From Mytilus trossulus (lineage: Eukaryota), in NCBI RefSeq assembly GCF_036588685.1, contig NC_086381.1, positions 12,462,001 to 12,526,000 of the forward strand: a stretch of 64,000 nt of DNA, written 5' to 3'. Below are positions 7,314 to 27,841 of this stretch, one piece after another. The notes beneath the pieces are model-generated. The model worked only from the letters and a program-made list of their open reading frames with translations, was not told the DNA's origin and did no database searches. How positions within the stretch are numbered: the stretch's first letter is position 1; each line of letters starts with the position of its first letter. The translations under genes were made by a program, and so were the position numbers.

Positions 7314-9365
7314 TCACTTTTTATGACTTGCTGCAAAATAGGCATCTAAAATGTCAGCATACACATTATTCATGTCTATTTCCTGTGATAAATCCGATTT
7401 TTCTATAAAATTTTTCATAAAATTAGTACAATTTCCAAACATGACCGTAACACCAACTGGTTTGTATTCGGAGTGGATTTGTATTAAAGCTTTCATCCCA
7501 TTCATGTCAATATAGTTCATAGACGAACAGTCGATAATAATATGCGTAAGGGGTACGACAGGTGTTTCGTTTTCAAGATTTGCTTTTGACATCGAAATTC
7601 TTTCATCACTGCTACAGCTATTTTTGCTCTGATCAACGTTAATTTCAACGTTAAACTCTGGTTGTTTTCGATAGGCTTTCGGATTAAAAGTTGCTTGGTA
7701 TAGTTTTGTTATAAATTGATCAGCTGTAGCAAAGTAAAGAGATGATTCCATTCGGAATATTGCTATTTTCGGGTTACATAATGGAACGTCATGAGTCTTT
7801 TGATCCAGAAGGCGATCTTCCTGCTCAAGTTTTCTAATGGTATACGAAGATGATCTTTGACTTTGCACAACAACTGTTAAAAGACAAAGTAGCACTCCAA
7901 CATACAAAGCGTAAGGAAAATCAATAAGAACACCACACAGTACTGTACCAACAAAAATTACGAAATCATAACGGTTTACTCGCCACAGCATCGGTAGGTC
8001 CTTGAACTGGTATAAGAGATTTTTAATAGCTGCGATGATCATAACTGCAAGAACAGCTTTAGGTAATGATTCAACATATTTTCCAATGAAAAGTATTACA
8101 AGCAATACAAAAACAGCTGAAACCATGCCACTTAATGTTGTCTTTGCTCCCATTGTACTCAAAACAATTGTACGAGGTGGTGCAACGCAAGCTGGAAAGC
8201 AGGAGAAAAAAGACCCACCTAGATTTGAAATACCATATGCGACGAGTTCTTGATTATCGTCAACTGAATATCCGTGTTTCACCTCACAAAGTCGGGCCAT
8301 CGAAATCGTAAGCACAAACACGATTATACCGACGACAGCACTTTGTCCTATAATATCTACAGACACTCGAGGTAACTTCGGAGTTGGCAGTCCAGCAGGT
8401 ATATTTCCTACTACACCTATTCCGAAGTTGTCATGTAATTGTGTATAGGAAGAAATAAATGTTGATAGGACAACCAAAATTAAATCAATTGGTATTGGCA
8501 TTTTCATTTTGTTCTTGTATCTCTCATTTATGACATCTTTTACCAATACGAGTATAATAAGGCATATTATAGAGACTAGGAATGTAGCAACATGAATGTG
8601 TGGAAAAACTTTGAATATTTGAATATATACATATATAAGTTTTCCTGGTTTGTTCACGGGTCGAATTGTTATGCCAAGAGCATTAGGAATTTGGCTGGAA
8701 ATGATATGAATAGCACCGGTTGTGGTAAAAGCTGCAATGAAAGAAGATGACAAATAAGAAGTTATAAAACCCATTCGGCACAACCCCATGATGAACAGCA
8801 ACAATCCAACAATAAATGACGAACCTGCTGCTACTGACGCTTTGTACTCTAAACCTAAATTTGCGATGTCTGAAGAAATTGTTGTCCGATTATCATCCGT
8901 GGAACCGTTTGAAACTGACTTATGACCTGTCAAACCATACTGTTCTAACTGCAACTCTACCATTTCTGCTGTCAAAATAGCAATCACAGCATTTGTTCCG
9001 AGCGATACGTGGTGAGACGTTCCGAAAAGAACATACAGAAGCACTGGAAAAAATGATGTATACAATCCATACGCCGGCGATAATGATGCTAATATTCCCA
9101 ATGCAAGTCCCTGTGGTACATGAAGGCAAGCTACTGATAATCCACTTATTATATCATCAAAGAGGTACACCCGGAATTTGTACTTTCGTAAGACATTTAT
9201 GACTGGAAATAGTGCTAGTAAATATGACCTTAACTTTGAAAAAGTACATTTGTCTTTTATATTCTCCGACAATGACGTAGACGAGTGCGGTGGTCTGCCA
9301 TAAAGTTCATATAATTCAGACTGTGTTTTCATAGATCTGGTTAGCAGTAAAACGTCAGAGGACAT
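7314..9365 (-). CDS. SLC26/SulP anion transporter (prestin/pendrin family), copy 1, single coding exon, 683 aa
   Basis: Uninterrupted ORF with SLC26 motifs: D-x-ISG...PQG, YGLYTSFFP, FGTS-x-H, GFITSYLS, NQELVAYG, and a C-terminal STAS domain (LYFATA, IIDCSSMNYID). Polypyrimidine tract plus AG acceptor at 9415-9414, 48 nt upstream of the ATG. Confidence 0.96.
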   Translation of the reverse strand: MSSDVLLLTRSMKTQSELYELYGRPPHSSTSLSENIKDKCTFSKLRSYLLALFPVINVLRKYKFRVYLFDDIISGLSVACLHVPQGLALGILASLSPAYGLYTSFFPVLLYVLFGTSHHVSLGTNAVIAILTAEMVELQLEQYGLTGHKSVSNGSTDDNRTTISSDIANLGLEYKASVAAGSSFIVGLLLFIMGLCRMGFITSYLSSSFIAAFTTTGAIHIISSQIPNALGITIRPVNKPGKLIYVYIQIFKVFPHIHVATFLVSIICLIILVLVKDVINERYKNKMKMPIPIDLILVVLSTFISSYTQLHDNFGIGVVGNIPAGLPTPKLPRVSVDIIGQSAVVGIIVFVLTISMARLCEVKHGYSVDDNQELVAYGISNLGGSFFSCFPACVAPPRTIVLSTMGAKTTLSGMVSAVFVLLVILFIGKYVESLPKAVLAVMIIAAIKNLLYQFKDLPMLWRVNRYDFVIFVGTVLCGVLIDFPYALYVGVLLCLLTVVVQSQRSSSYTIRKLEQEDRLLDQKTHDVPLCNPKIAIFRMESSLYFATADQFITKLYQATFNPKAYRKQPEFNVEINVDQSKNSCSSDERISMSKANLENETPVVPLTHIIIDCSSMNYIDMNGMKALIQIHSEYKPVGVTVMFGNCTNFMKNFIEKSDLSQEIDMNNVYADILDAYFAASHKK

Positions 9366-17227: not shown

Positions 17228-18894
17228 CATTACTACTGTTGCTTTTATTTACCATTCAGTTTTCCAGATAGTGTTTGCTTTCTGATCGCCACACGATTTG
17301 GCAGTTTAACTTTGAGTAAGACAAGTCGTTATAGCCCTAAATACTGTTTTACATGTACAGAAGTATTGGTTAATAAAATATATATAAGCGTGGGAACAAA
17401 TAACATCACCTATAAATATAAAATTGAGAATGGAAATGAGAATGTGCCAAAGAGACGACAACCCGACCAAAGAGTAAGGAGTAAGTATATTTATAAATAT
17501 AGCTGAAAGAAAGAAGATTGAAAAAAAATATAGTCAAATGACCTTTGTAAGTGTTGTTTGTTTTATGGATTTTTGTCCATTATATACGTTTCGGAGTGTA
17601 GCGTGACGTCCACTTTCACTGAACTAGTACACGTTTTTTAAGGGCAAGCTGCAGCCCGCCTCCGGGTTCGAGCTGTGATAAAGACCCATTGGTTGCTTTG
17701 TTCTGCTTTTTTGTTCTTTGGTCGGGTTGTTTTTTCTTTGATACATTCCCTATTTCTATTCTCAATTCAATTTTATAATTCCAAAATGTGTGCGGAAAAA
17801 AACTTAAAGTATAATCGTAAACAACTAACCTCAATAGCTTTTGCGGTAAGGTGTTCCAAATGGTAGGAAAGTAAAAATACTACAAAACTATAACGTCTTT
17901 AGTTTAAACATATTTATTCATCATCTATACAAATATATAATCATATAAAATACACAATAATTACCGGATTCGGAAACAAGCTATATATAGCTTATATTAA
18001 TCCGTTTCCTTGAAATACCCACTCCAGTTAACTATTACATAAATATAGCATGCAATATTACAATGATATGGAACAAGAATAAATAAGTTATTATATAACT
18101 GAATAAGAAAGGAGAAAAAAAAGAATATTAAAATTCTATAACGTCTTTAATAGTAGAAGCCCAAAAGATATTCATTCAGTTACTACTATCAAATGATCCA
18201 TTATTAAAATCAACACAAGTCAAAGATCTAGTTCATGGATAAGTTATACATTAGGCAAGTTGATCTGATAGGGATTATAGCTTTTATTTAGGTTTGTTTT
18301 GGGTAATATAAGTCCCCTCAACTGTTCGCATACATTCTTTGCTTTCAAATAGTCGGCTTTGAACGTTTGTGGTGAATGTTAATCCAGAAAAGGCTTCAGA
18401 CTGCTGAAATTTAAAACGTGCTGTTTCTTATTGGAGAAACCTCTAAACAAATTTCTAATAAAAATAAAAATGTGTATACATGTAAACCTCAGATCTATGT
18501 ACGACCTCAAATCTGTGTCCGTTTCTCAAATCTATGCCCAATCGTGACGTCAATCGCTAATCTATGTCCATACAAAATTGTTCGACCTCAAATCTGTGGC
18601 CGATTTTTAATCATGACGTCATTCGCAAATCTATGTCCTTAAAAAAATAATTCGGCCTCAAATCTGTGGCCGATTTTTAATTGTGACGTTTTTCTCAAAT
18701 CTATGTCCGTTATAAAAGAAAAGGCTTTAAAACTGTGTAATGTTTAATTCTTTTTTAGCCATGCGCAAATTTATGCCCGTCTTATAATTTCGGCCTTATA
18801 GGTTTTTGTTATTCCCATAGTTCAATATTAATTTGGTGGTAGATCTATGTGTTTTCCATGTGTGTACAAGAGCTTAAGTATCAGTAAATCTTTC

Positions 18895-19257
18895 GTTCTT
18901 ATGTTGTACTGCTATACCACTGTCCCAGGTTAGGGGGAGGGTTGGGATCCCGCTAACATGTTTAACACCGCCACATTATTTATGTATGTGCATGTCCCAA
19001 GTTAGGAGCCTGTAATTCAGTGGTTGTTGTTTGTTCATGTGTTACAGTTTTGTTCATTTATTTTACATAAATGAGGCCGTTAGTTTTCCTCGTTTGAGTT
19101 GTTTTACATTGTCTTATCGGGCCTTTTATATCTGACTATGCGGTATGGGCTTTGCTTATTGTTGAAGGCTGTACGGTTACCTGTAGTTGTAAATGTTTGT
19201 GTCATTTTGGTTTTTTGTGGACAGTTGTCTCATTGGCAATAATACCACTTTTTTATA
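18895..19257. mobile_element. SINE-like repeat nested in the TIR element
   Basis: 3' part ggccttttata...gaaggctgtacggttacc...agttgtctcattggcaat recurs at ~22130-22330, 37180-37265 plus 42600-42680, 40346-40444 (rc), 48005-48140 (rc) and 62425-62565. Confidence 0.7.
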
Positions 19258-19695
19258 CTAGATAGATTATTTCGCTTGTATTTAAAGAGGGACTAAAAAA
19301 GTCCCTGATTCAAAATATTGTTTTTAAATATAAAAAAGAAGATGTGGTGTGATTTTTTTTATTTAAGAACGGTTTTGTTTGATTTTTGTTTTATAAAGTA
19401 ATTTCTCCATGTTTGTGGTTAAAATTATGTGTGTGGATTGTATGCCGCCTTGAAGAATTCAACTACACGTTTTTTTCTAACTAAAAAAAAGAAAAGAATT
19501 ACTATTTGTTTGCAACTTAAGCGTACTTTAATTGTCTCTAAATTGTCTCATATTGCTGTTAAATTGACATTCATACCACATTATCTATTATATGTTACTT
19601 TAAATATCAATAAAATCATTCTGAATTGATAAAAATAAAAGTTACGTGCTCTATATTTTTAATTAAAATATTTGTGAATCACAATAGAGCATATA

Positions 19696-20317
19696 TCAAT
19701 TGTTTGGTCTTAGCTGATATCTATTTAGTTCAAATGTGAAACTTGTAATTATGTCTTTAATCACAAAAATCTTTCCCCGAGAAGGATCATTCTTTATGTT
19801 TTGGCATATTCCTTCTCTCCAGAAACCGGATGTAAACACTGCCGTCCCTTTGTTCATAGCTGGATTTGTTTTGAATTGCAAATACTCCCCAATTGTAGGA
19901 GTGAAGATATCCTGATAATTGTCAGAAAACAGTTCAAGAGGATATATCTCTAGTTGACGTTTTTGAAAACAGTCCATCAGCCCACTATTCATAACAAATT
20001 TTCCTCCAGTCTAAAAAAACAAACCATAAAGCAATTTTAAACCATTTGTATTAATAAATAAAATATCGACATTAACTTTTTTTCATATAAACCACATTGA
20101 CACTGATAATGAATAGATACATAAAAAGTAAAAGGATAAGAAAAAAATTTAATTTAAATTAACATTTGATATTTCTATTTACATACATGTATCAACTTGT
20201 ATGACTTACGGGAATAGCATTTTCTTTATCGTTGCTATCATTTACAAAGCGCCTTTTGTAAAGTTCCTTGTAATACGGACTAGCACCTTCCATGGGATCG
20301 AGATTATTTTGGAACAT
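19696..20317 (-). CDS. Two-exon 140-aa ORF carried by the TIR element; possible Tudor/Agenet-like domain
   Basis: Exon 20317-20210 (ATG, 36 codons, GTAAGT donor) joins in frame to exon 20010-19696 (tttgtttttttAG acceptor) with no stops; ATTAAA about 30 nt after the stop. Confidence 0.6.
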
Positions 20318-23117
20318 CTATGACGCAATATAAAAAAGGACATAGATTTTGGGAAAGGACATAGATTTGAGGCAGGACATAGATTTGAGGCTTACATACA
20401 TATATATGATTGGGCTACAGGAGATCGAGTATAGATTAGTAAAGAAATAAAGGAAATATCAATTACCTGCCAGATTAGTAAAAAGTAAAAGAGCAAAACA
20501 AAACAGACCACTATGGAAAAATCAAACCGAAAAGTCCGTTATTAAATGACAAAAGCTCACACACATCAAACGATAAGAAAACAACTGTCATATTCCTGAC
20601 TTGGTACAAAAGAAGGGCAATGCAAGTTGTCACTGTACAAGTTTTATAGTCACCATCGGAAAATGTTAGACCGTTTCGATTTTTCCCAACAGGTTTTCGA
20701 GGTTTCAGAAGTTAATATATCAGAAATGTTATCTGTAAATTAACCGGTTATGTCCATTTCTCTGTGTTATCATTTTAACTTGTCTACCTTTATGCATACA
20801 TGTCAAAAGCAAACCATGGCATAACTGTTTGAAGTTTTGTTTTTTTCAATGCTCTTCAAACTTGATTTGGCTTTCCAACTGTTGATTCGATTAATACAAA
20901 TTATATAAAGCTAATCGTTGAGTAACCTGTGCGTTGCTGCATCCTCGTACGTCATCATGCCATCATAACACAATTAGACCTAATTCTCCTCCACTTAGGA
21001 GAATTGTCTTATGGATGAGTACTTTATTCCGTGCAATCCGCTATGGTTTACAAAAGGCAGTAGTAGATTACTTATGCTTAAATCTCCTTAATAAAATAAG
21101 AAGATACAAAACAAGTTAACGAGAGGAATCGCATAAACTATAAACATAACGATACCAGGTACTTTGACCAGGAAAGCACCTCCTGTTAAGCATGTATCAC
21201 CAGCCCATATGAATCAATACTTAGCCAAAAGGTCACTTGCTATACGACGAATTTGGTTAGAGGCTGTTATTGCGTGTTTTACGATCTAAGACCATGAAAA
21301 CAAATTGCCAGTTTGTTGAGACAAACATGCCTGGCATTGGTCAACCAATGTGTGATGTTGGAGTTAAAACTTATGTTGTATCAATTTCAGTCGTTCTTCA
21401 TAATAACTATGTTGGACTATTTTTCTGTGTCTCAAGGACGTCCTTGCCAATGAAGCGTGAATATGTACGAGCGTAACGTATCAAATGAAATATGTTAACG
21501 CACTGAATGGCGCAAGGAGGAAGTCGATAATTGAAAGCATTACTTTTGTCATAGAACCTAGTTTGAAGTCGTCAATATCGAAGAAAGGATCAAGATAAGT
21601 ACTGATACCTCTTTTTTTAATATATACACATGAAAACATGTTAATAGAGAATAGTATTTTTTTTTAATACTCCATACGTTTCAATACGAAACATTACATT
21701 GTTTGGGGATTAATACGGTTTGTAACATTGAATAAGCCATAGCATATAGATATAAAAAAAAAAAAATTACGGGACTTGAAATTTTATATATTAGAGGTTT
21801 GACAAAGCCTATGGAACCGTGACTGATATCGATAACGTAACGTCATGCAGGATAGGGTTGTGGTTAAGCCTTTGTGGCTGATATCGCTATCATCGTGATC
21901 ACAGAAGGCTGATACAACACGATTGATTGTCATCGAGCGTATTTCACATACAACTTACCTATATTTAGAACTGAATATATGATAACAGATGATATAATAA
22001 AATATAAAGATAAAACTATGAACATGTCTTGCACACATTTTCCGTATCTGCTAAATGGAGGATTGGTTGGGACTAACTTTCAATGTTTGGGTCGGAATTT
22101 ATTGGTCTTCAGCCTTTGTGTTTCGTTTCTTGCACGGCCATAAACTAAATCATTGATTTTCTTGTTTGAACTTTTCATATTTTGTCTTGTTTGAGGCTTT
22201 TGTATCTAACTACGGTTTGTGTGTTTGATCATTGTTAAAGGCAATGCAGTTACGTAAAATTACGTACATCTACTTTATTTGACCTTTGTAAATATGTGTA
22301 TCATTGGCAATCACATTGCACTTCCTTGTTTGTTATTATAGTAAAAATCAATTACAGTTTTAAATAATTTCATTTAAAAGTTTACTACAAGATTTAATAT
22401 TTACATTAAAGAAATCTCTGGTTTGACATTTAACTATAGGCAATAAAAGTTATCATGAGTATTTATTATTCCTATGGCGCATTCAGTATCAGACTTGTTC
22501 CTGATTTATTGCAAATTCCAGTTGAATGTCACCATTTCAGTTTCTCAAGGGAAACTCTATAATACTTAACTAAAGATATATATTTCGTTCCACATAATTT
22601 TACTCATTTAATTTTTATGGTGATGTTGTTTCTGCAGCTTTTTATTTGAGATGGTATCCATATGTAATAATTACCATCGATAAACTGGTTGGCTTAATAA
22701 CATTTAAAGCTTTTGACCTTTTTTGTTTGTTTTCCAAAGTTTTATCATAACTGGGAATGTATTGCTATTCACTTGATACAGCATCATGTGTTTGCTTTGT
22801 ATTAAGACATTGAACAATAAACTAAAATACTTTTCCAAAACAACTCGTCGAGTCCGTTGACGTTCGTTTTTTTTTTTTTTATGTTTTGTCGATTACGAAG
22901 GGAAAGATTCAGTTGAGTTTTGACTTTTAAGTATTTTTTGGTAACTGTCAGTCCTCTTAAGTCTTATTATGTGTGCTTGTTACGATTGTTGAGTGAAGCC
23001 GTTTTTTAAATCATTATTACCAACGCATTCTTTATGTGTGTGTCTGTCGGTTGATGTTAATTGGGCTTTGTCTTAACTATTTTTCGATTGATATTTTTAG
23101 GTTATACCACACCTTAA

Positions 23118-25756: not shown

Positions 25757-27841
25757 TTACTTTCTATGAGTTGCTGCAAAATAAGCATCTAAAATGTCAG
25801 AATACACATTTTGTATATCTACTGTCTCTGATAAATCCGATTTCTCCGTGAACGTTTTCATGAAATTAGTACAGTTTCCAAACATTACAGTAACCCCAAC
25901 ATATTTGTATTCGGAGTTGATCTGTATTAAAGCCTTCATACCATTCATGTCGATATAGTTCATAGACGAACAGTCGATAATAATATGCGTGAGGGGTACG
26001 ACGGGTATTTCGTTTTCATTGTTTGTTTTTGACAGCGACATTCTTTCATCGTTGTTACCGTTATTTTCGCTTTGATTTATGTTTATTTCAACATTATTTT
26101 CTAAATGTTTGTCTTGTTGTTTTGGAAAGGCTTTTGGATTAAATGTTGCTTTGTACAATTCTTTTACAAATTGATCAGCAGTAGCAAAATAAAGAGATGA
26201 TTCCATTCTAAATATTGCAATTTTTGAATTACATAATGGAATATCATGAGTCTTTTGCTCCAGAAGACGATCCTCTTGCTCAACTTTTCTAATGGTGTAC
26301 GAAGATGAATTCTGACTTTGCACGACAACTGTTAAAAGACAAAGTAGCACTCCAACATACAGGGCGTAAGGGAAATCAATTAGAACACCACACAATACTG
26401 TTCCAACAAAGATAACAAAATCATAACGATTTACTCGCCACAGTTTTGGTAGTTCCTTGAACTGGTATAATAGATTTTTAACAGCTACGATGATCATTAC
26501 TGCAAGTACAGCTTTAGGAGCTGATTCTAAATATTTTCCTATGAACATTATTACAAGCAAGACAAAAATAGCTGATACTATTCCATTCAATGTTGTCTTT
26601 GCACCCATTGTACTTAAGATAACTGTACGTGGTGGTGCAACGCAAGCTGGAAAGCAGGAGAAAAAAGAGCCACCTAAATTTGCAATACCATATGCGACGA
26701 GTTCTTGATTGTCGTCAACTGAATATCCGTGTTTCACCTCACAGAGTCGGGCCATTGAAATCGTAAGCACAAACACAATGAAACCGACAACAACACTATG
26801 TCCTAGTATATCTACCGACACTCGAGGTAGCTCCGGCGTTGGTAGACCAGGAGGTATTTCTCCTACAACACCAATATCGAAGGTGTCGTGTAACTTTGCA
26901 AAATGTGAAATAACTGTTGCTGTTACAACTAAAATTATATCGATTGGTATTGGCATTTTCATTTTGTTTTTGAATCTCTCATTAATGACATCTTTTATCA
27001 ATACAAGTATTATTAAGCATATAACGGAGACTATCAATGTAGCAACATGAATCTTCGGAAATGCTTTGAATATTTCAATATATACATATATCAGTTTTCC
27101 TGGTTTGTTAACAGGTGGAATTTTTATGCCAAGAGCATTAGGGATTTGGCTGGAAATGATATGAATAGCACCGGTTGTGGTAAAAGCCGCAATGAAAGAA
27201 GATGACAGATAAGAAGTAATGAACCCCATTCGGCACAACCCCATGATGAACAGCAGTAATCCAACGATAAAAGACGAACCTGCTGCTACAGACACTTTGT
27301 ACTTTAACACGTCATTATCCATTTCCGGTGAAACTGTTGTTAGGTTACCAACCGTGGAACCGTTAACAGCAGAGTGATGACCAGGCAAATCATACTGTTC
27401 TAACCGTGACTCTACAAGCTCTGCTGTAAAAATTGCAATCACAGCATTTGTTCCGAAAGAAACGTGTTGCGATGTTCCGAAAATCACATACAGGAGAACA
27501 GGAAAAAAGGACGTATACAATCCATAGGCCGGTGATAATGATGCTAATATACCAAATGCAAGTCCTTGTGGAAAATGAAGACAAGCTACAGATAAGCCAC
27601 TTATCAAATCATCTAAGATGTATTTCCTGATCTTATACGTTCTTATTACGTTTATTATTGGGAAAAGTGTTAGTAAATATGCACATAACTTGGAAAGGGT
27701 ACATTTTTTCATGATATTTTCTGAAAATGACTTCGATGGGCTCTTTGGTTTGCCATAAAACTCGTACAATTCAGACTGTGTTTTACGAGATCTTGAAAGC
27801 TGTAAAATATCAGACGACATATCTCCGTTGTTGATACTCAT
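25757..27841 (-). CDS. SLC26/SulP anion transporter, copy 2 (close paralog of copy 1), single coding exon, 694 aa
   Basis: Same motifs, colinear and highly similar to 7314-9365. Homologous acceptor (ttgttatttctatattttAG) at 27878-27877. 3' flank 25390-25560 resembles 7000-7150. Confidence 0.96.
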   Translation of the reverse strand: MSINNGDMSSDILQLSRSRKTQSELYEFYGKPKSPSKSFSENIMKKCTLSKLCAYLLTLFPIINVIRTYKIRKYILDDLISGLSVACLHFPQGLAFGILASLSPAYGLYTSFFPVLLYVIFGTSQHVSFGTNAVIAIFTAELVESRLEQYDLPGHHSAVNGSTVGNLTTVSPEMDNDVLKYKVSVAAGSSFIVGLLLFIMGLCRMGFITSYLSSSFIAAFTTTGAIHIISSQIPNALGIKIPPVNKPGKLIYVYIEIFKAFPKIHVATLIVSVICLIILVLIKDVINERFKNKMKMPIPIDIILVVTATVISHFAKLHDTFDIGVVGEIPPGLPTPELPRVSVDILGHSVVVGFIVFVLTISMARLCEVKHGYSVDDNQELVAYGIANLGGSFFSCFPACVAPPRTVILSTMGAKTTLNGIVSAIFVLLVIMFIGKYLESAPKAVLAVMIIVAVKNLLYQFKELPKLWRVNRYDFVIFVGTVLCGVLIDFPYALYVGVLLCLLTVVVQSQNSSSYTIRKVEQEDRLLEQKTHDIPLCNSKIAIFRMESSLYFATADQFVKELYKATFNPKAFPKQQDKHLENNVEININQSENNGNNDERMSLSKTNNENEIPVVPLTHIIIDCSSMNYIDMNGMKALIQINSEYKYVGVTVMFGNCTNFMKTFTEKSDLSETVDIQNVYSDILDAYFAATHRK

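What the first reader, a model, noticed from the sequence alone, without database searches (positions are those of the whole stretch)
18481..20396. TIR transposon carrying an intact spliced 140-aa gene with a Tudor/Agenet-like pattern and no transposase
Seen: TGT...ACA termini, 4-bp TSD (taca), subterminal repeats and two in-frame exons encoding MFQNNLDPMEGASPYYKELYKRRFVNDSNDKENAIP|TGGKFVMNSGLMDCFQKRQLEIYPLELFSDNYQDIFTPTIGEYLQFKT...SGFWREGICQNIKNDPSRGKIFVIKDIITSFTFELNRYQLRPNN. The ORF track shows only exon 2. Inference: the C-terminal G-x-x-L-x-F...G-x-W-x-x-G...F-x-I...E-L-x-x-x-x-LRP pattern resembles Royal-family (Agenet/Tudor) beta-barrels. Established: Ginger transposons have TGT ends and 4-bp TSDs and can carry introns and extra domains. 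The product could be an element-encoded chromatin reader (targeting or anti-silencing), a captured host gene, or the tail of a longer deleted gene, since the tag before the ATG could itself be an acceptor.
Basis: partly seen in the sequence, partly recalled or inferred. Interest (0 to 1): 0.78.

Follow-up and report, generated by a model that had tools for sequence, protein, structure and literature searches.

The report
Deleted Ginger2-like transposon copy in mussel
This is an ordinary broken copy of a mussel "Ginger"-type jumping gene that lost the middle of its transposase gene, so its neat 140-residue reading frame is only the leftover tail of that enzyme, a tail that seems to fold like a Tudor domain.

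Summary
Window 18481-20396 has TGTAA...TTACA ends, a TACA duplication on both sides, subterminal repeats and two in-frame exons. A public-run contig skips exactly 20011-20209, which confirms the splice.

It is not a stand-alone gene. Longer copies elsewhere in this genome (C5, two in C6) match the window copy end to end, except for about 2.27 kb missing between window 20311 and 20308. That stretch holds a 304-aa exon with an rve/DDE integrase domain (Pfam E 4.7e-16) and two acidic exons.

The 140-aa frame is the last two transposase exons. Its ATG and next codon come from a variant subterminal repeat, brought into frame by a deletion at a 4-nt microhomology. This junction occurs only once in the genome. 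The spliced contig leaves the window exactly at the junction and continues into the upstream transposase exon.

All 8 older short copies carrying the last exon have it broken.

Target (mostly TATA), TGTNR ends and a 4-bp duplication fit Ginger2, not Ginger1.

The barrel is the transposase's own C-terminal domain.

A word search of earlier scan notes found no prior note on this family.

The parts
18477..18480 (.). Left target-site duplication, TACA
   Evidence: read directly. The same four bases follow the right end.
18481..18539 (+). Left terminal inverted repeat, starting TGTAAACC (TGTNR)
   Evidence: pair I1 (70 nt, 79%, of which 59 nt lie inside the element). One search found the same end in other copies.
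18488..18778 (+). Left subterminal direct repeats (CAAATCTATGTCC-type units, 70-nt period). They include TGACGTCA palindromes at 18545-18552 and 18614-18621.
   Evidence: families D1-D4 and D6. for the palindromes.
18892..19257 (.). Nested high-copy interspersed repeat. It is present in the C5, C6, C8:35.2M and C1 copies and absent from the C8:50.36M and C8:51.16M long copies and from the old short copies.
   Evidence: query 412-777 matches many unrelated places at 89-92%; 9815 first-look candidates. (the other copies jump from 409 to 789). (huge summed word depth). No Rfam family.
19342..19695 (-). 3' untranslated part of the transposase's last exon
   Evidence: the spliced contig X1 record 7 covers 19342-20010.
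19696..20010 (-). Last transposase exon: 104 codons plus a TGA stop. It encodes the C-terminal Tudor-like beta-barrel domain.
   Evidence: It is 97-98% identical in protein to the same exon of long copies. Fold.
20011..20209 (-). Intron, 199 nt, GT..AG
   Evidence: GTAAGT donor, TTTTTTTAG acceptor. (contig joins 20010 to 20210).
20210..20311 (-). Remnant of the penultimate transposase exon (34 codons, QNNLDPMEGASPYYKELYKRRF...AIP)
   Evidence: It is 100% identical in protein to the C6 copies.
20308..20311 (.). Deletion junction. The 4-nt microhomology (TTTG on +, CAAA on the gene strand) is shared by the exon and the subterminal region of long copies. About 2.27 kb is missing here.
   Evidence: the two alignments overlap by 4 nt. 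(alignments). (the junction is unique in the genome).
20312..20317 (-). ATG TTC: the 'start' of the 140-aa frame. It derives from the subterminal stretch CATAGAT(T/G)TTCC, not from the transposase gene.
   Evidence: C5 and C6 read T where the window reads G. (the G variant is also in the long copy at C8:35.25M, where it is not in any coding context).
20338..20396 (-). Right terminal inverted repeat (ends GGCTTACA), with three GGACATAGATTT subterminal units at 20335-20386
   Evidence: I1 and D5.
20397..20400 (.). Right target-site duplication, TACA

Best explanation
Window 18481-20396 is a single-copy, internally deleted, non-autonomous copy of a mussel Ginger2-like cut-and-paste DNA transposon about 4.2-4.4 kb long.

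Long copies of the family encode, on the same strand, a five-exon transposase:
- an HHCC zinc-finger motif plus a DD35E rve integrase core (first exon);
- two acidic linker exons;
- a short exon with an SPYY...Y..RF motif;
- a last exon that folds as a small Tudor/SH3-like beta-barrel.

In the window copy, about 2.27 kb was lost between a CAAA in the subterminal region and a CAAA at the start of the fourth exon. The lost stretch held most of the 5' leader, the integrase exon and both linker exons. The likely cause is faulty gap repair or template switching at microhomology, which is inferred from established knowledge of how DNA-transposon deletion derivatives arise.

A variant ATG in the subterminal repeat happens to fall in frame with what is left. 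This gives an open 140-codon frame that is a relic, not a gene.

The copy keeps both TIRs and the subterminal repeats. In principle a working transposase of the family could still move it (inferred).
For: Collinearity with long copies:
- The window copy aligns to the C5 and C6 copies over 1-1831 (95.5-97%) and again over 1828-1916. In those copies 2.27-2.47 kb lies in between.
- The missing piece holds a 304-aa open exon with Pfam rve (E 4.7e-16, 59.3 bits against a cut-off of 32.6). Its catalytic residues are D181, D238 and E274, with spacings of 56 and 35, and it carries H-x3-H-x31-C-x2-C.

The junction:
- It is read base by base.
- A 76-nt probe across it matched in full only at the window's own place. 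The 47 other matches covered one side only, and 39 of 39 candidates were scored.

RNA:
- Contig X1 record 7 (2147 nt) skips 20011-20209.
- At 20311 it runs on into letters that equal the end of the upstream exon of long copies plus ATG.
- The spliced RNA therefore comes from long copies.

Annotated mussel proteins join the integrase and this tail in one chain:
- P0044 (M. coruscus, 441 aa), P0058 (463 aa) and P0154 (576 aa).
- In P0154, rve lies at 170-264 and the tail at 478-573, at 44% identity and E 2e-25.

No selection on the tail outside long copies:
- 8 of 8 old short copies (L011-L015, L024-L026) carry stops or frame shifts in the last exon.
- The changes private to the window are two non-synonymous (S>F, Y>C) against one synonymous.

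Ginger2-type features:
- TGTAA ends and a 4-bp TSD.
- 18 of 23 distinct ends in other copies abut TATA, matching the features quoted.
Against: - The frame is fully open and both splice sites are intact. A short protein could be made if the 85 nt of retained end sequence can drive transcription. I could not test this: all four runs laid were contigs, and 'RNA' is the tool's guess for X1 and X6.
- None of the family's long copies that I read is fully intact. C5 lacks 206 bp, which removes 39 conserved residues and the first donor. Both C6 copies share a TAA stop in the integrase exon. Both C8 copies at 50.36M and 51.17M have 2-3 stops. The copies at C8:35.25M and C12:42.9M are deleted or interrupted. 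A working partner in this assembly is therefore not shown.
- Superfamily placement rests on end and target features and on source names (SCAND3-like, KRBA2-like), not on a tree.
Confidence: 0.9

Rival explanations
1. The element carries a functional stand-alone 140-aa gene, a Tudor/Agenet-like chromatin reader that serves the element in targeting or anti-silencing.
For: - The frame is open and the splice sites are canonical.
- The last exon models as a Tudor-like barrel.
- RefSeq-type tail-only models of 178 aa exist for a related family in M. edulis and M. californianus (P0014 cluster).
Against: - The frame is the 3' end of the transposase gene.
- Its ATG arises only through the deletion.
- The junction is single-copy.
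- The only spliced contig seen leaves the window at the junction.
- 8 of 8 older short copies let the exon decay.
- The 178-aa models start at an internal Met of the P0045-type transposase sequence.
Confidence: 0.04
2. The truncated copy makes a C-terminal transposase fragment that damps transposition of the family. It would poison multimers or compete for a target, in the manner of the KP repressor of P elements.
For: - The open frame contains the whole C-terminal domain.
- Integrase C-terminal SH3-like domains take part in multimer contacts and in DNA binding (passages of PMC9316232).
- The KP analogy is recalled, not taken from a call.
Against: - No expression evidence for this copy.
- Most of the 5' leader is deleted.
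- Two private non-synonymous changes against one synonymous change give no sign of constraint.
- The copy is single.
Confidence: 0.04
3. The coding piece is a host gene fragment captured by the transposon (Pack-type cargo).
For: Gene-fragment capture is described for the related GingerRoot elements (passages of PMC6839031).
Against: - The piece lies in the same place and order in all long copies.
- In three related mussel families the same domain sits at the C-terminus of rve-bearing proteins.
- No integrase-free host parent was found. The named homologues are TE-type models from bivalves.
Confidence: 0.01

Closest known systems
Ginger2/TDD DNA transposons (Bao, Kapitonov and Jurka 2010, PMC2836005; passages read)
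   Same: - TGTNR termini.
- A 4-bp TSD.
- An AT-rich RTATAY-like target: TATA at 18 of 23 ends, and ATACAT at the window copy.
- TIR length within 50-180 bp.
- A transposase with an HHCC motif and a DDE integrase core.
- Introns in the transposase gene.
- Presence in molluscs (the paper lists Littorina).
   Different: - The window copy has lost the integrase.
- The family has a long acidic linker, an SPYY...Y..RF motif downstream of the core, and a C-terminal Tudor-like barrel. The passages I read do not mention these for Ginger2.
- No tree was built here.
Ginger1 DNA transposons (same paper)
   Same: TGTNR ends, a 4-bp TSD, an integrase-like transposase and extra C-terminal domains.
   Different: - Ginger1 targets CCGG or CCGT. 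This family targets TATA or TACA.
- No OTU or Ulp1 domain was found by Pfam in P0154, P0044 or P0058.
- The Y-rich motif lies after the DDE core, not before the zinc finger.
Internal-deletion non-autonomous derivatives of DNA transposons (for example Ds from Ac, or KP from P; recalled general knowledge)
   Same: - Both ends are kept.
- The inside is collinear with the long copy apart from one gap.
- The breakpoint sits at a short microhomology.
- A truncated reading frame is left behind.
   Different: Nothing essential. Here the leftover frame happens to be open, spliceable and a whole domain.
Chromodomain-bearing integrases of chromoviral Gypsy elements, and the SH3-like C-terminal domain of retroviral integrase
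   Same: - A small SH3-superfamily barrel lies C-terminal to a DDE integrase core.
- Chromodomains direct integration to heterochromatin (cited in PMC6839031).
- The HIV-1 IN CTD is a five-stranded SH3-like barrel that binds DNA (PMC9316232).
   Different: - There is no sequence-level match to either.
- The best structural matches are Tudor domains rather than chromodomains or IN CTDs.
- A conserved NPA(M/L)xKGT loop is inserted between strands 1 and 2.

Membership tests
Ginger2/TDD | Integrase-like DDE (rve) transposase | tested here: met
   Met for the family, not for the window copy. L032 6951-7865(-) matches rve at E 4.7e-16, with D-56-D-35-E spacing. The window copy lacks it.
Ginger2/TDD | H2C2 zinc finger N-terminal to the core | tested here: met
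   Met by motif only. H-x3-H-x31-C-x2-C is present in the C5 exon and conserved in P0041, P0045, P0058 and P0016. Pfam Integrase_H2C2 did not report it at E<=1. More distant homologues do carry PF17921.
Ginger2/TDD | Termini TGTNR...YNACA | tested here: met
   The ends read TGTAAACC and TGTAAGCC outward, in the window and in other copies.
Ginger2/TDD | 4-bp TSD in an AT-rich RTATAY target | tested here: met
   The window has TACA on both sides, in the context A-TACA-T. In other copies, 18 of 23 distinct ends abut TATA. L015 has TATT at both ends and L020 has TATA with unlike fifth and sixth bases, so the duplication is 4 bp and not 6.
Ginger2/TDD | TIRs of about 50-180 bp | tested here: met
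   About 59 nt lie inside the element. The pair is 70 nt at 79% when the palindromic flank is included.
Ginger2/TDD | No GPY/F and no YPYY motif | tested here: inconclusive
   No model of these motifs was on hand. An SPYYKELYKRRF motif exists but lies after the DDE core, unlike Ginger1's YPYY, which lies before the zinc finger.
Ginger2/TDD | Integrase groups with Ginger2 in a tree | not tested
   No reference Ginger1, Ginger2 or Polinton sequences were available. The only hints are source names on homologues: 'SCAN domain-containing protein 3-like' and 'KRAB-A domain-containing protein 2-like'. [quoted passage not shown]
Ginger1 | CCGG or CCGT target-site duplication | tested here: not met
   The TSDs are TACA, TATA and TATT, against the definition quoted.
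Ginger1 | C-terminal OTU or Ulp1 protease domain | tested here: not met
   Pfam finds only rve-type domains in P0154, P0044 and P0058. It finds nothing above cut-off in the last exon.
GingerRoot | 6-bp TSD, mostly TA...TA termini, TIRs of 100-150 bp | tested here: not met
   This family has a 4-bp TSD and TGT...ACA termini, against the passages read.
Royal family (Tudor/Agenet/chromo/PWWP) domains | Five-stranded SH3-like barrel superposable on Tudor domains | tested here: met
   Model level only.
- Mean pLDDT is 72.5, and blocks 61-104 average 85-93.
- VIA-align against 48,161 chains: TDRD3 Tudor Z 8.9, rmsd 2.1, 60 of 60 residues; Tbtudor Z 8.8, rmsd 1.5, 57 of 60; an Agenet pair Z 7.7.
- Second look: Z up to 8.9.
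- Foldseek found no match at E<=0.001; its best was a UHRF1 tandem Tudor at 1.7e-2.
- The tool notes that a best Z of 7-8 is common for models without true relatives.
Royal family (Tudor/Agenet/chromo/PWWP) domains | Sequence-profile membership | tested here: not met
   Pfam gives only DUF7078 at E 0.14 and 0.082, below its cut-off. The A1 profile against PDB sequences gave no Tudor hit at E<=10. The atlas gave scores up to 0.86 only, including one IN_DBD_C row at 0.83.
Royal family (Tudor/Agenet/chromo/PWWP) domains | Aromatic cage for methyl-lysine or methyl-arginine | not testable with these tools
Conserved aromatics exist (F46, F62, W63, F82, F91, F93 of the exon), but their geometry is unknown.
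Non-autonomous internal-deletion derivative | Both ends and all retained inner sequence are collinear with a longer transposase-bearing copy, with one gap | tested here: met
Pack-type gene capture | The cargo derives from a host gene unrelated to the transposase | tested here: not met
   The frame is the transposase's own 3' end.

The most novel reading that the evidence does not exclude
The C-terminal barrel shared by this bivalve Ginger2-like family may be a true Tudor-type reader of methylated histones, or of another methylated partner, that tethers the transposase to marked chromatin. That would make it a DNA-transposon counterpart of the chromodomain of chromoviral integrases.
Probability: 0.12. 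Interest if true: 0.6.

Novelty: new member of a known kind. Interest (0 to 1): 0.25.

Why it matters
For the finding itself, little. It is a routine deletion derivative, and its open frame should not be annotated as a host or cargo gene.

Two things are of modest use:
- It is a clean worked example of how a deletion at microhomology plus a variant ATG can produce a convincing 'intact spliced gene' inside a transposon. Gene-prediction pipelines do fall for this, as the tail-only models in other mussels show.
- The family shows a Ginger2-like integrase-type transposase ending in a conserved Tudor-like barrel. My searches found no paper pairing Ginger2 with Tudor (0 papers). They found none describing a chromodomain in Ginger2 (1 paper, which reports none in GingerRoot). 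If the barrel reads chromatin marks, it would bear on how integrase-type DNA transposons choose their targets.

Tried and rejected
- Single-sequence structure prediction of the last exon failed (pLDDT 35), so that model was not used.
- Pfam on both window exons gave nothing above cut-off.
- A sequence-profile search of the PDB with A1 gave only weak integrase-core hits (E 0.03-0.07, from the few long rows in A1) and a chance viral leader-protein hit at E 0.013. It gave nothing for the barrel.
- The ESM Atlas gave only sub-threshold leads.
- Rfam found no family in 18300-20600.
- I first took the C5 and C6 copies for intact autonomous partners. Searches showed that each long copy I read has a defect, so I withdrew that claim.
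- I considered that the window's ATG arose after the deletion. One search showed the same G variant in a long copy (C8:35.25M), so it is an older polymorphism of the subterminal repeat.
- I considered a 6-bp TSD (TATATA). I rejected it because L015 and L020 agree over 4 bp only.
- dN/dS across copies was reduced to raw counts, because there are too few differences for a meaningful ratio.
- Earlier scan notes near this place concern other features of the window. A word search for Ginger, integrase and related words found nothing.
- Supplementary files of the papers were not opened. Repbase could not be consulted, so I cannot say whether this Mytilus family already has a Repbase name.

Full report
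**What is in the window**

One search shows an element that starts TGTAAACC at 18481 and ends GGCTTACA at 20396. TACA lies directly outside both ends (18477-18480 and 20397-20400).

One search finds inverted arms of 70 nt at 79% (18470-18539 and 20338-20407). About 59 nt of each arm lie inside the element. It also finds several families of subterminal direct repeats built on CAAATCTATGTCC, with a 70-nt period on the left and 18-19 nt on the right.

On the minus strand there are two open pieces:
- 36 codons from 20317 to 20210, followed by GTAAGT.
- After TTTTTTTAG, 104 codons from 20010 to 19699, followed by TGA.

**Copies in the same genome**

The window is C9:12462001-12526000 of a 1.3-Gb assembly. 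Earlier notes of this scan call it a mussel. The closest named proteins are from Mytilus coruscus, at 95-97% identity.

A whole-genome DNA search with the element gave 77 matches from 40 scored candidates.
- Three places match query 1-1831 at 96-97% and then stop: C5:39562896 and two in C6.
- The last 89 bases (1828-1916) match elsewhere.

Local blastn on the fetched DNA shows that in C5 the two parts are separated by about 2.27 kb, giving an element of 4196 bp. The same holds in the two C6 copies, with about 2.47 kb.

The window copy is therefore collinear with these long copies, apart from one internal gap between window 20311 and 20308.

**What the gap held**

- It matches Pfam rve at E 4.7e-16, 59.3 bits against a cut-off of 32.6.
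- It has D181, D238 and E274, with spacings of 56 and 35.
- It has an H-x3-H-x31-C-x2-C motif.

Two acidic exons follow. Then comes an exon that begins CAG|ATG CAA AAT AAT and reads MQNNLDPMEGASPYYKELYKRRF...AIP. Last is the exon that the ORF list shows in the window.

Annotated mussel proteins carry both parts in one chain:
- P0044 (M. coruscus, 441 aa).
- P0058 (M. galloprovincialis, 463 aa).
- P0154 (M. edulis, 576 aa): rve lies at 170-264, and the match to the window's last exon lies at 478-573, at 44% identity and E 2e-25.

Of ten longer homologues of the last exon scanned with Pfam, three (P0003, P0016, P0017) showed rve upstream. Seven showed no family.

**The junction and the start codon**

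Alignments A2 and A3 show three sequences on the gene strand:
- The window reads ...GCGTCATAGATGTTCCAAAATAATCTCGATCCC.
- Long copies read ...GCGTCATAGATTTTCCAAATCTATGTCC in the subterminal region.
- Long copies read ...TTTCAGATGCAAAATAATCTCGATCCC at the exon.

The break lies in a shared CAAA. ATG TTC of the window frame comes from the subterminal repeat, where the window has G and the C5 and C6 copies have T. The same G is found in the long copy at C8:35.25M, so it is a pre-existing variant that the deletion brought into frame.

A 76-nt probe across the junction matched over its full length only at the window's own place. The other 47 matches covered one side only, and 39 of 39 candidates were scored. 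The deletion form has therefore not spread.

**RNA evidence**

Only Logan contigs were available, and 'RNA' is the tool's guess for runs X1 and X6.

In X1, record 7 (2147 nt) lies on 19342-20010 and then on 20210-20311. This is exactly the predicted splice. At 20311 it continues with letters unlike the window. Read on the gene strand, these equal the end of the third exon of the long copies followed by ATG. A molecule lacking two introns is best explained as spliced RNA.

This shows two things:
- The splice is real.
- The transcript seen belongs to a long form, not to the window copy.

X20 record 15 is an unspliced piece (19667-20311) that also leaves at 20311. No listed contig bridges the junction. 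Contigs cannot prove absence.

**Do copies keep the frame?**

tblastn was run exon by exon against the fetched loci.

The last exon in long copies:
- It is open in four (C5, C6 twice, C12).
- At C8:50.36M it is open, but its stop codon has changed.
- At C8:51.16M it has one stop.
- At C8:35.25M it carries an insertion.

The group of older short copies is about 77-84% identical to C5. They share breakpoints different from the window's: full-length coordinates about 1629, then 2431-2509, then 3993. In all 8 of 8 the exon is damaged:
- L012 has two stops.
- L013 has one stop.
- L011 has a frame-shifted middle.
- L014, L015, L024, L025 and L026 are split between frames or carry stops.

The family has at least six different deletion classes among about 22 distinct elements in the loci.

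Against the long copies, the window's coding parts differ at very few sites. The changes private to the window are S>F and Y>C (non-synonymous) and one synonymous change. That is too few for a ratio and gives no sign of constraint.

**Is there a working partner?**

The whole genome was searched with the 304-aa exon (60 matches at E<=1e-20; 130 of 1290 candidates scored) and with P0044. Direct reading shows defects in every long copy of this family that I examined:
- C5 has an open integrase exon but lacks 206 bp present in C6. That removes 39 residues conserved in all homologues (KLPEFYYNYNNRVHK...DEQ) and the first donor site.
- Both C6 copies share a TAA after ...PPVRG.
- The two C8 copies at 50.36M and 51.17M have 2-3 stops.
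- C8:35.25M and C12:42.9M are deleted or interrupted.

Related families at 54-67% identity have open exons. Only the best candidates are scored, so an intact copy may exist, but I cannot show one.

**Which kind of transposon?**

Passages of Bao et al. 2010 (PMC2836005) give the definitions:
- Ginger1: 4-bp CCGG or CCGT duplications, TGTNR ends, YPYY and GPY/F motifs, and OTU or Ulp1 domains.
- Ginger2: 4-bp duplications, TGTNR ends, an AT-rich RTATAY target, 50-180-bp TIRs, a zinc finger plus DDE, and no GPY/F or YPYY.

In this family, 18 of 23 distinct ends abut TATA. L015 (TATT at both ends) and L020 fix the duplication length at 4 bp. The window has TACA within ATACAT.

GingerRoot has a 6-bp TSD and mostly TA...TA ends (PMC6839031), so it does not fit.

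Source names on homologues are 'SCAN domain-containing protein 3-like' and 'KRAB-A domain-containing protein 2-like'. They point the same way, since those genes are said to derive from the Ginger2 clade (abstract start of PMC3575427, seen in the listing only).

I therefore file the family as Ginger2-like. No tree was built.

**The C-terminal domain**

A phmmer scan of 1.84 billion representatives with the last exon gave 40 hits at E<=0.001. The named ones are all bivalve: Mytilus and Mercenaria. The one exception is a protein labelled as from a Sedimenticola MAG, which I take for host DNA in a bin.

The alignment A1 (30 rows) shows these motifs:
- YPxELF
- FxPxxGxxVxFRxNPA(L/M)xKGTxVFxSGYWRKG
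- GxxYTVKD
- NRYQIR

The AlphaFold model built on A1 has a mean pLDDT of 72.5. Blocks 61-104 average 85-93. It has five strands (43-46, 65-75, 79-86, 92-95, 100-102) and a poorly modelled conserved loop between strands 1 and 2.

Structure searches gave the following:
- Foldseek against the PDB: no match at E<=0.001. Its list is led by Tudor domains (UHRF1 tandem Tudor at 1.7e-2; ERCC6L2 Tudor at TM 0.79 of the target).
- VIA-align against 48,161 representative chains: TDRD3 Tudor Z 8.9 (rmsd 2.1, 60 of 60), a trypanosome Tudor Z 8.8, LBR Tudor Z 8.7, and a list made up almost wholly of Tudor, chromo-barrel, PWWP, SAWADEE, Agenet and other small barrels.
- The second look agrees.

The tool warns that a best Z of 7-8 is common for unmatched models, so this is a fold-level statement of moderate strength. 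Sequence profiles do not place the domain in any Royal family.

Its position after a DDE integrase core recalls two known domains:
- The five-stranded SH3-like C-terminal domain of retroviral integrase, which binds DNA (PMC9316232, passages).
- The chromodomains of chromoviral integrases, which direct integration to heterochromatin (cited in PMC6839031).

For the intact transposase I consider a DNA-binding or multimerising CTD role most likely (about 55%). A chromatin or methyl-mark reader role is the bolder alternative (about 25%). Both are inferred.

**Surroundings**

The left flank (18100-18480) matches in full only itself and contains a piece of an old dispersed repeat. The nearest long frame is a 694-aa ORF at 25757-27841 on the minus strand. 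The element lies about 5.4 kb beyond that ORF's stop codon.

**Verdict**

Noticed in passing
window 18892-19257: A nested interspersed repeat of about 365 bp with very many copies. One search gave 9815 first-look candidates and dozens of 89-92% matches. One search gave summed contig word depth in the millions in run X23. It is present in the C5, C6, C8:35.2M, C1 and window copies of the transposon and absent from the C8:50.36M and C8:51.16M long copies and the old short copies. It therefore marks a sub-lineage. No Rfam family matched.
   Followed up: partly
L031 4335-8717 and L031 8722 to L033 3109 (G000:C6:6774334-6783108): Two long copies lie head to head, right end against right end, with only 3-4 bases between them. 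They are 99.5% alike over their right parts, and both carry the same TAA in the integrase exon. This could be an inverted duplication, an aberrant transposition product or an assembly effect.
   Followed up: partly
window 18545-18552 and 18614-18621; L032 about 7870-7890: TGACGTCA palindromes sit at the same phase in the 70-nt left subterminal repeats, with a half site at 18683-18688. In long copies another lies just upstream of the transposase ATG. They may be transposase-binding or promoter motifs. The resemblance to a CRE site is recalled, not tested.
   Followed up: no
L032 about 6975 (G000:C5, long copy): The C5 copy lacks 206 bp that the C6 copies have. In their place it has a short (CA)n-like run. 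This removes 39 conserved residues after the catalytic E and the first splice donor.
   Followed up: yes
proteins P0014, P0156, P0157: RefSeq-type 178-aa 'uncharacterized protein' models in Mytilus edulis and M. californianus consist only of the tail of a related transposase (the P0045 type). They start at an internal Met. This is the same kind of tail-only frame as in the window, annotated as a gene.
   Followed up: partly
protein P0011: A 109-aa homologue of this bivalve transposon domain is deposited as a protein of a Sedimenticola sp. metagenome-assembled genome, on an 8.7-kb contig. It is probably host (bivalve) DNA binned with a symbiont.
   Followed up: no
window 20552-20635: Another very high-copy repeat lies just right of the element. 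It shows as a depth spike in all four runs, with many loose ends at 20576-20611.
   Followed up: no
window 18330-18432: A piece of an old dispersed repeat lies in the left flank, with about 40 matches at 72-87% across the genome.
   Followed up: no
L017 1501 and L021 1501 (G000:C12:443658 and C8:52726821): Two different deletion derivatives have the same 10 bases (GTAATATATA) outside their left ends. This may be chance in an AT-rich target, or both may sit in copies of another repeat.
   Followed up: no
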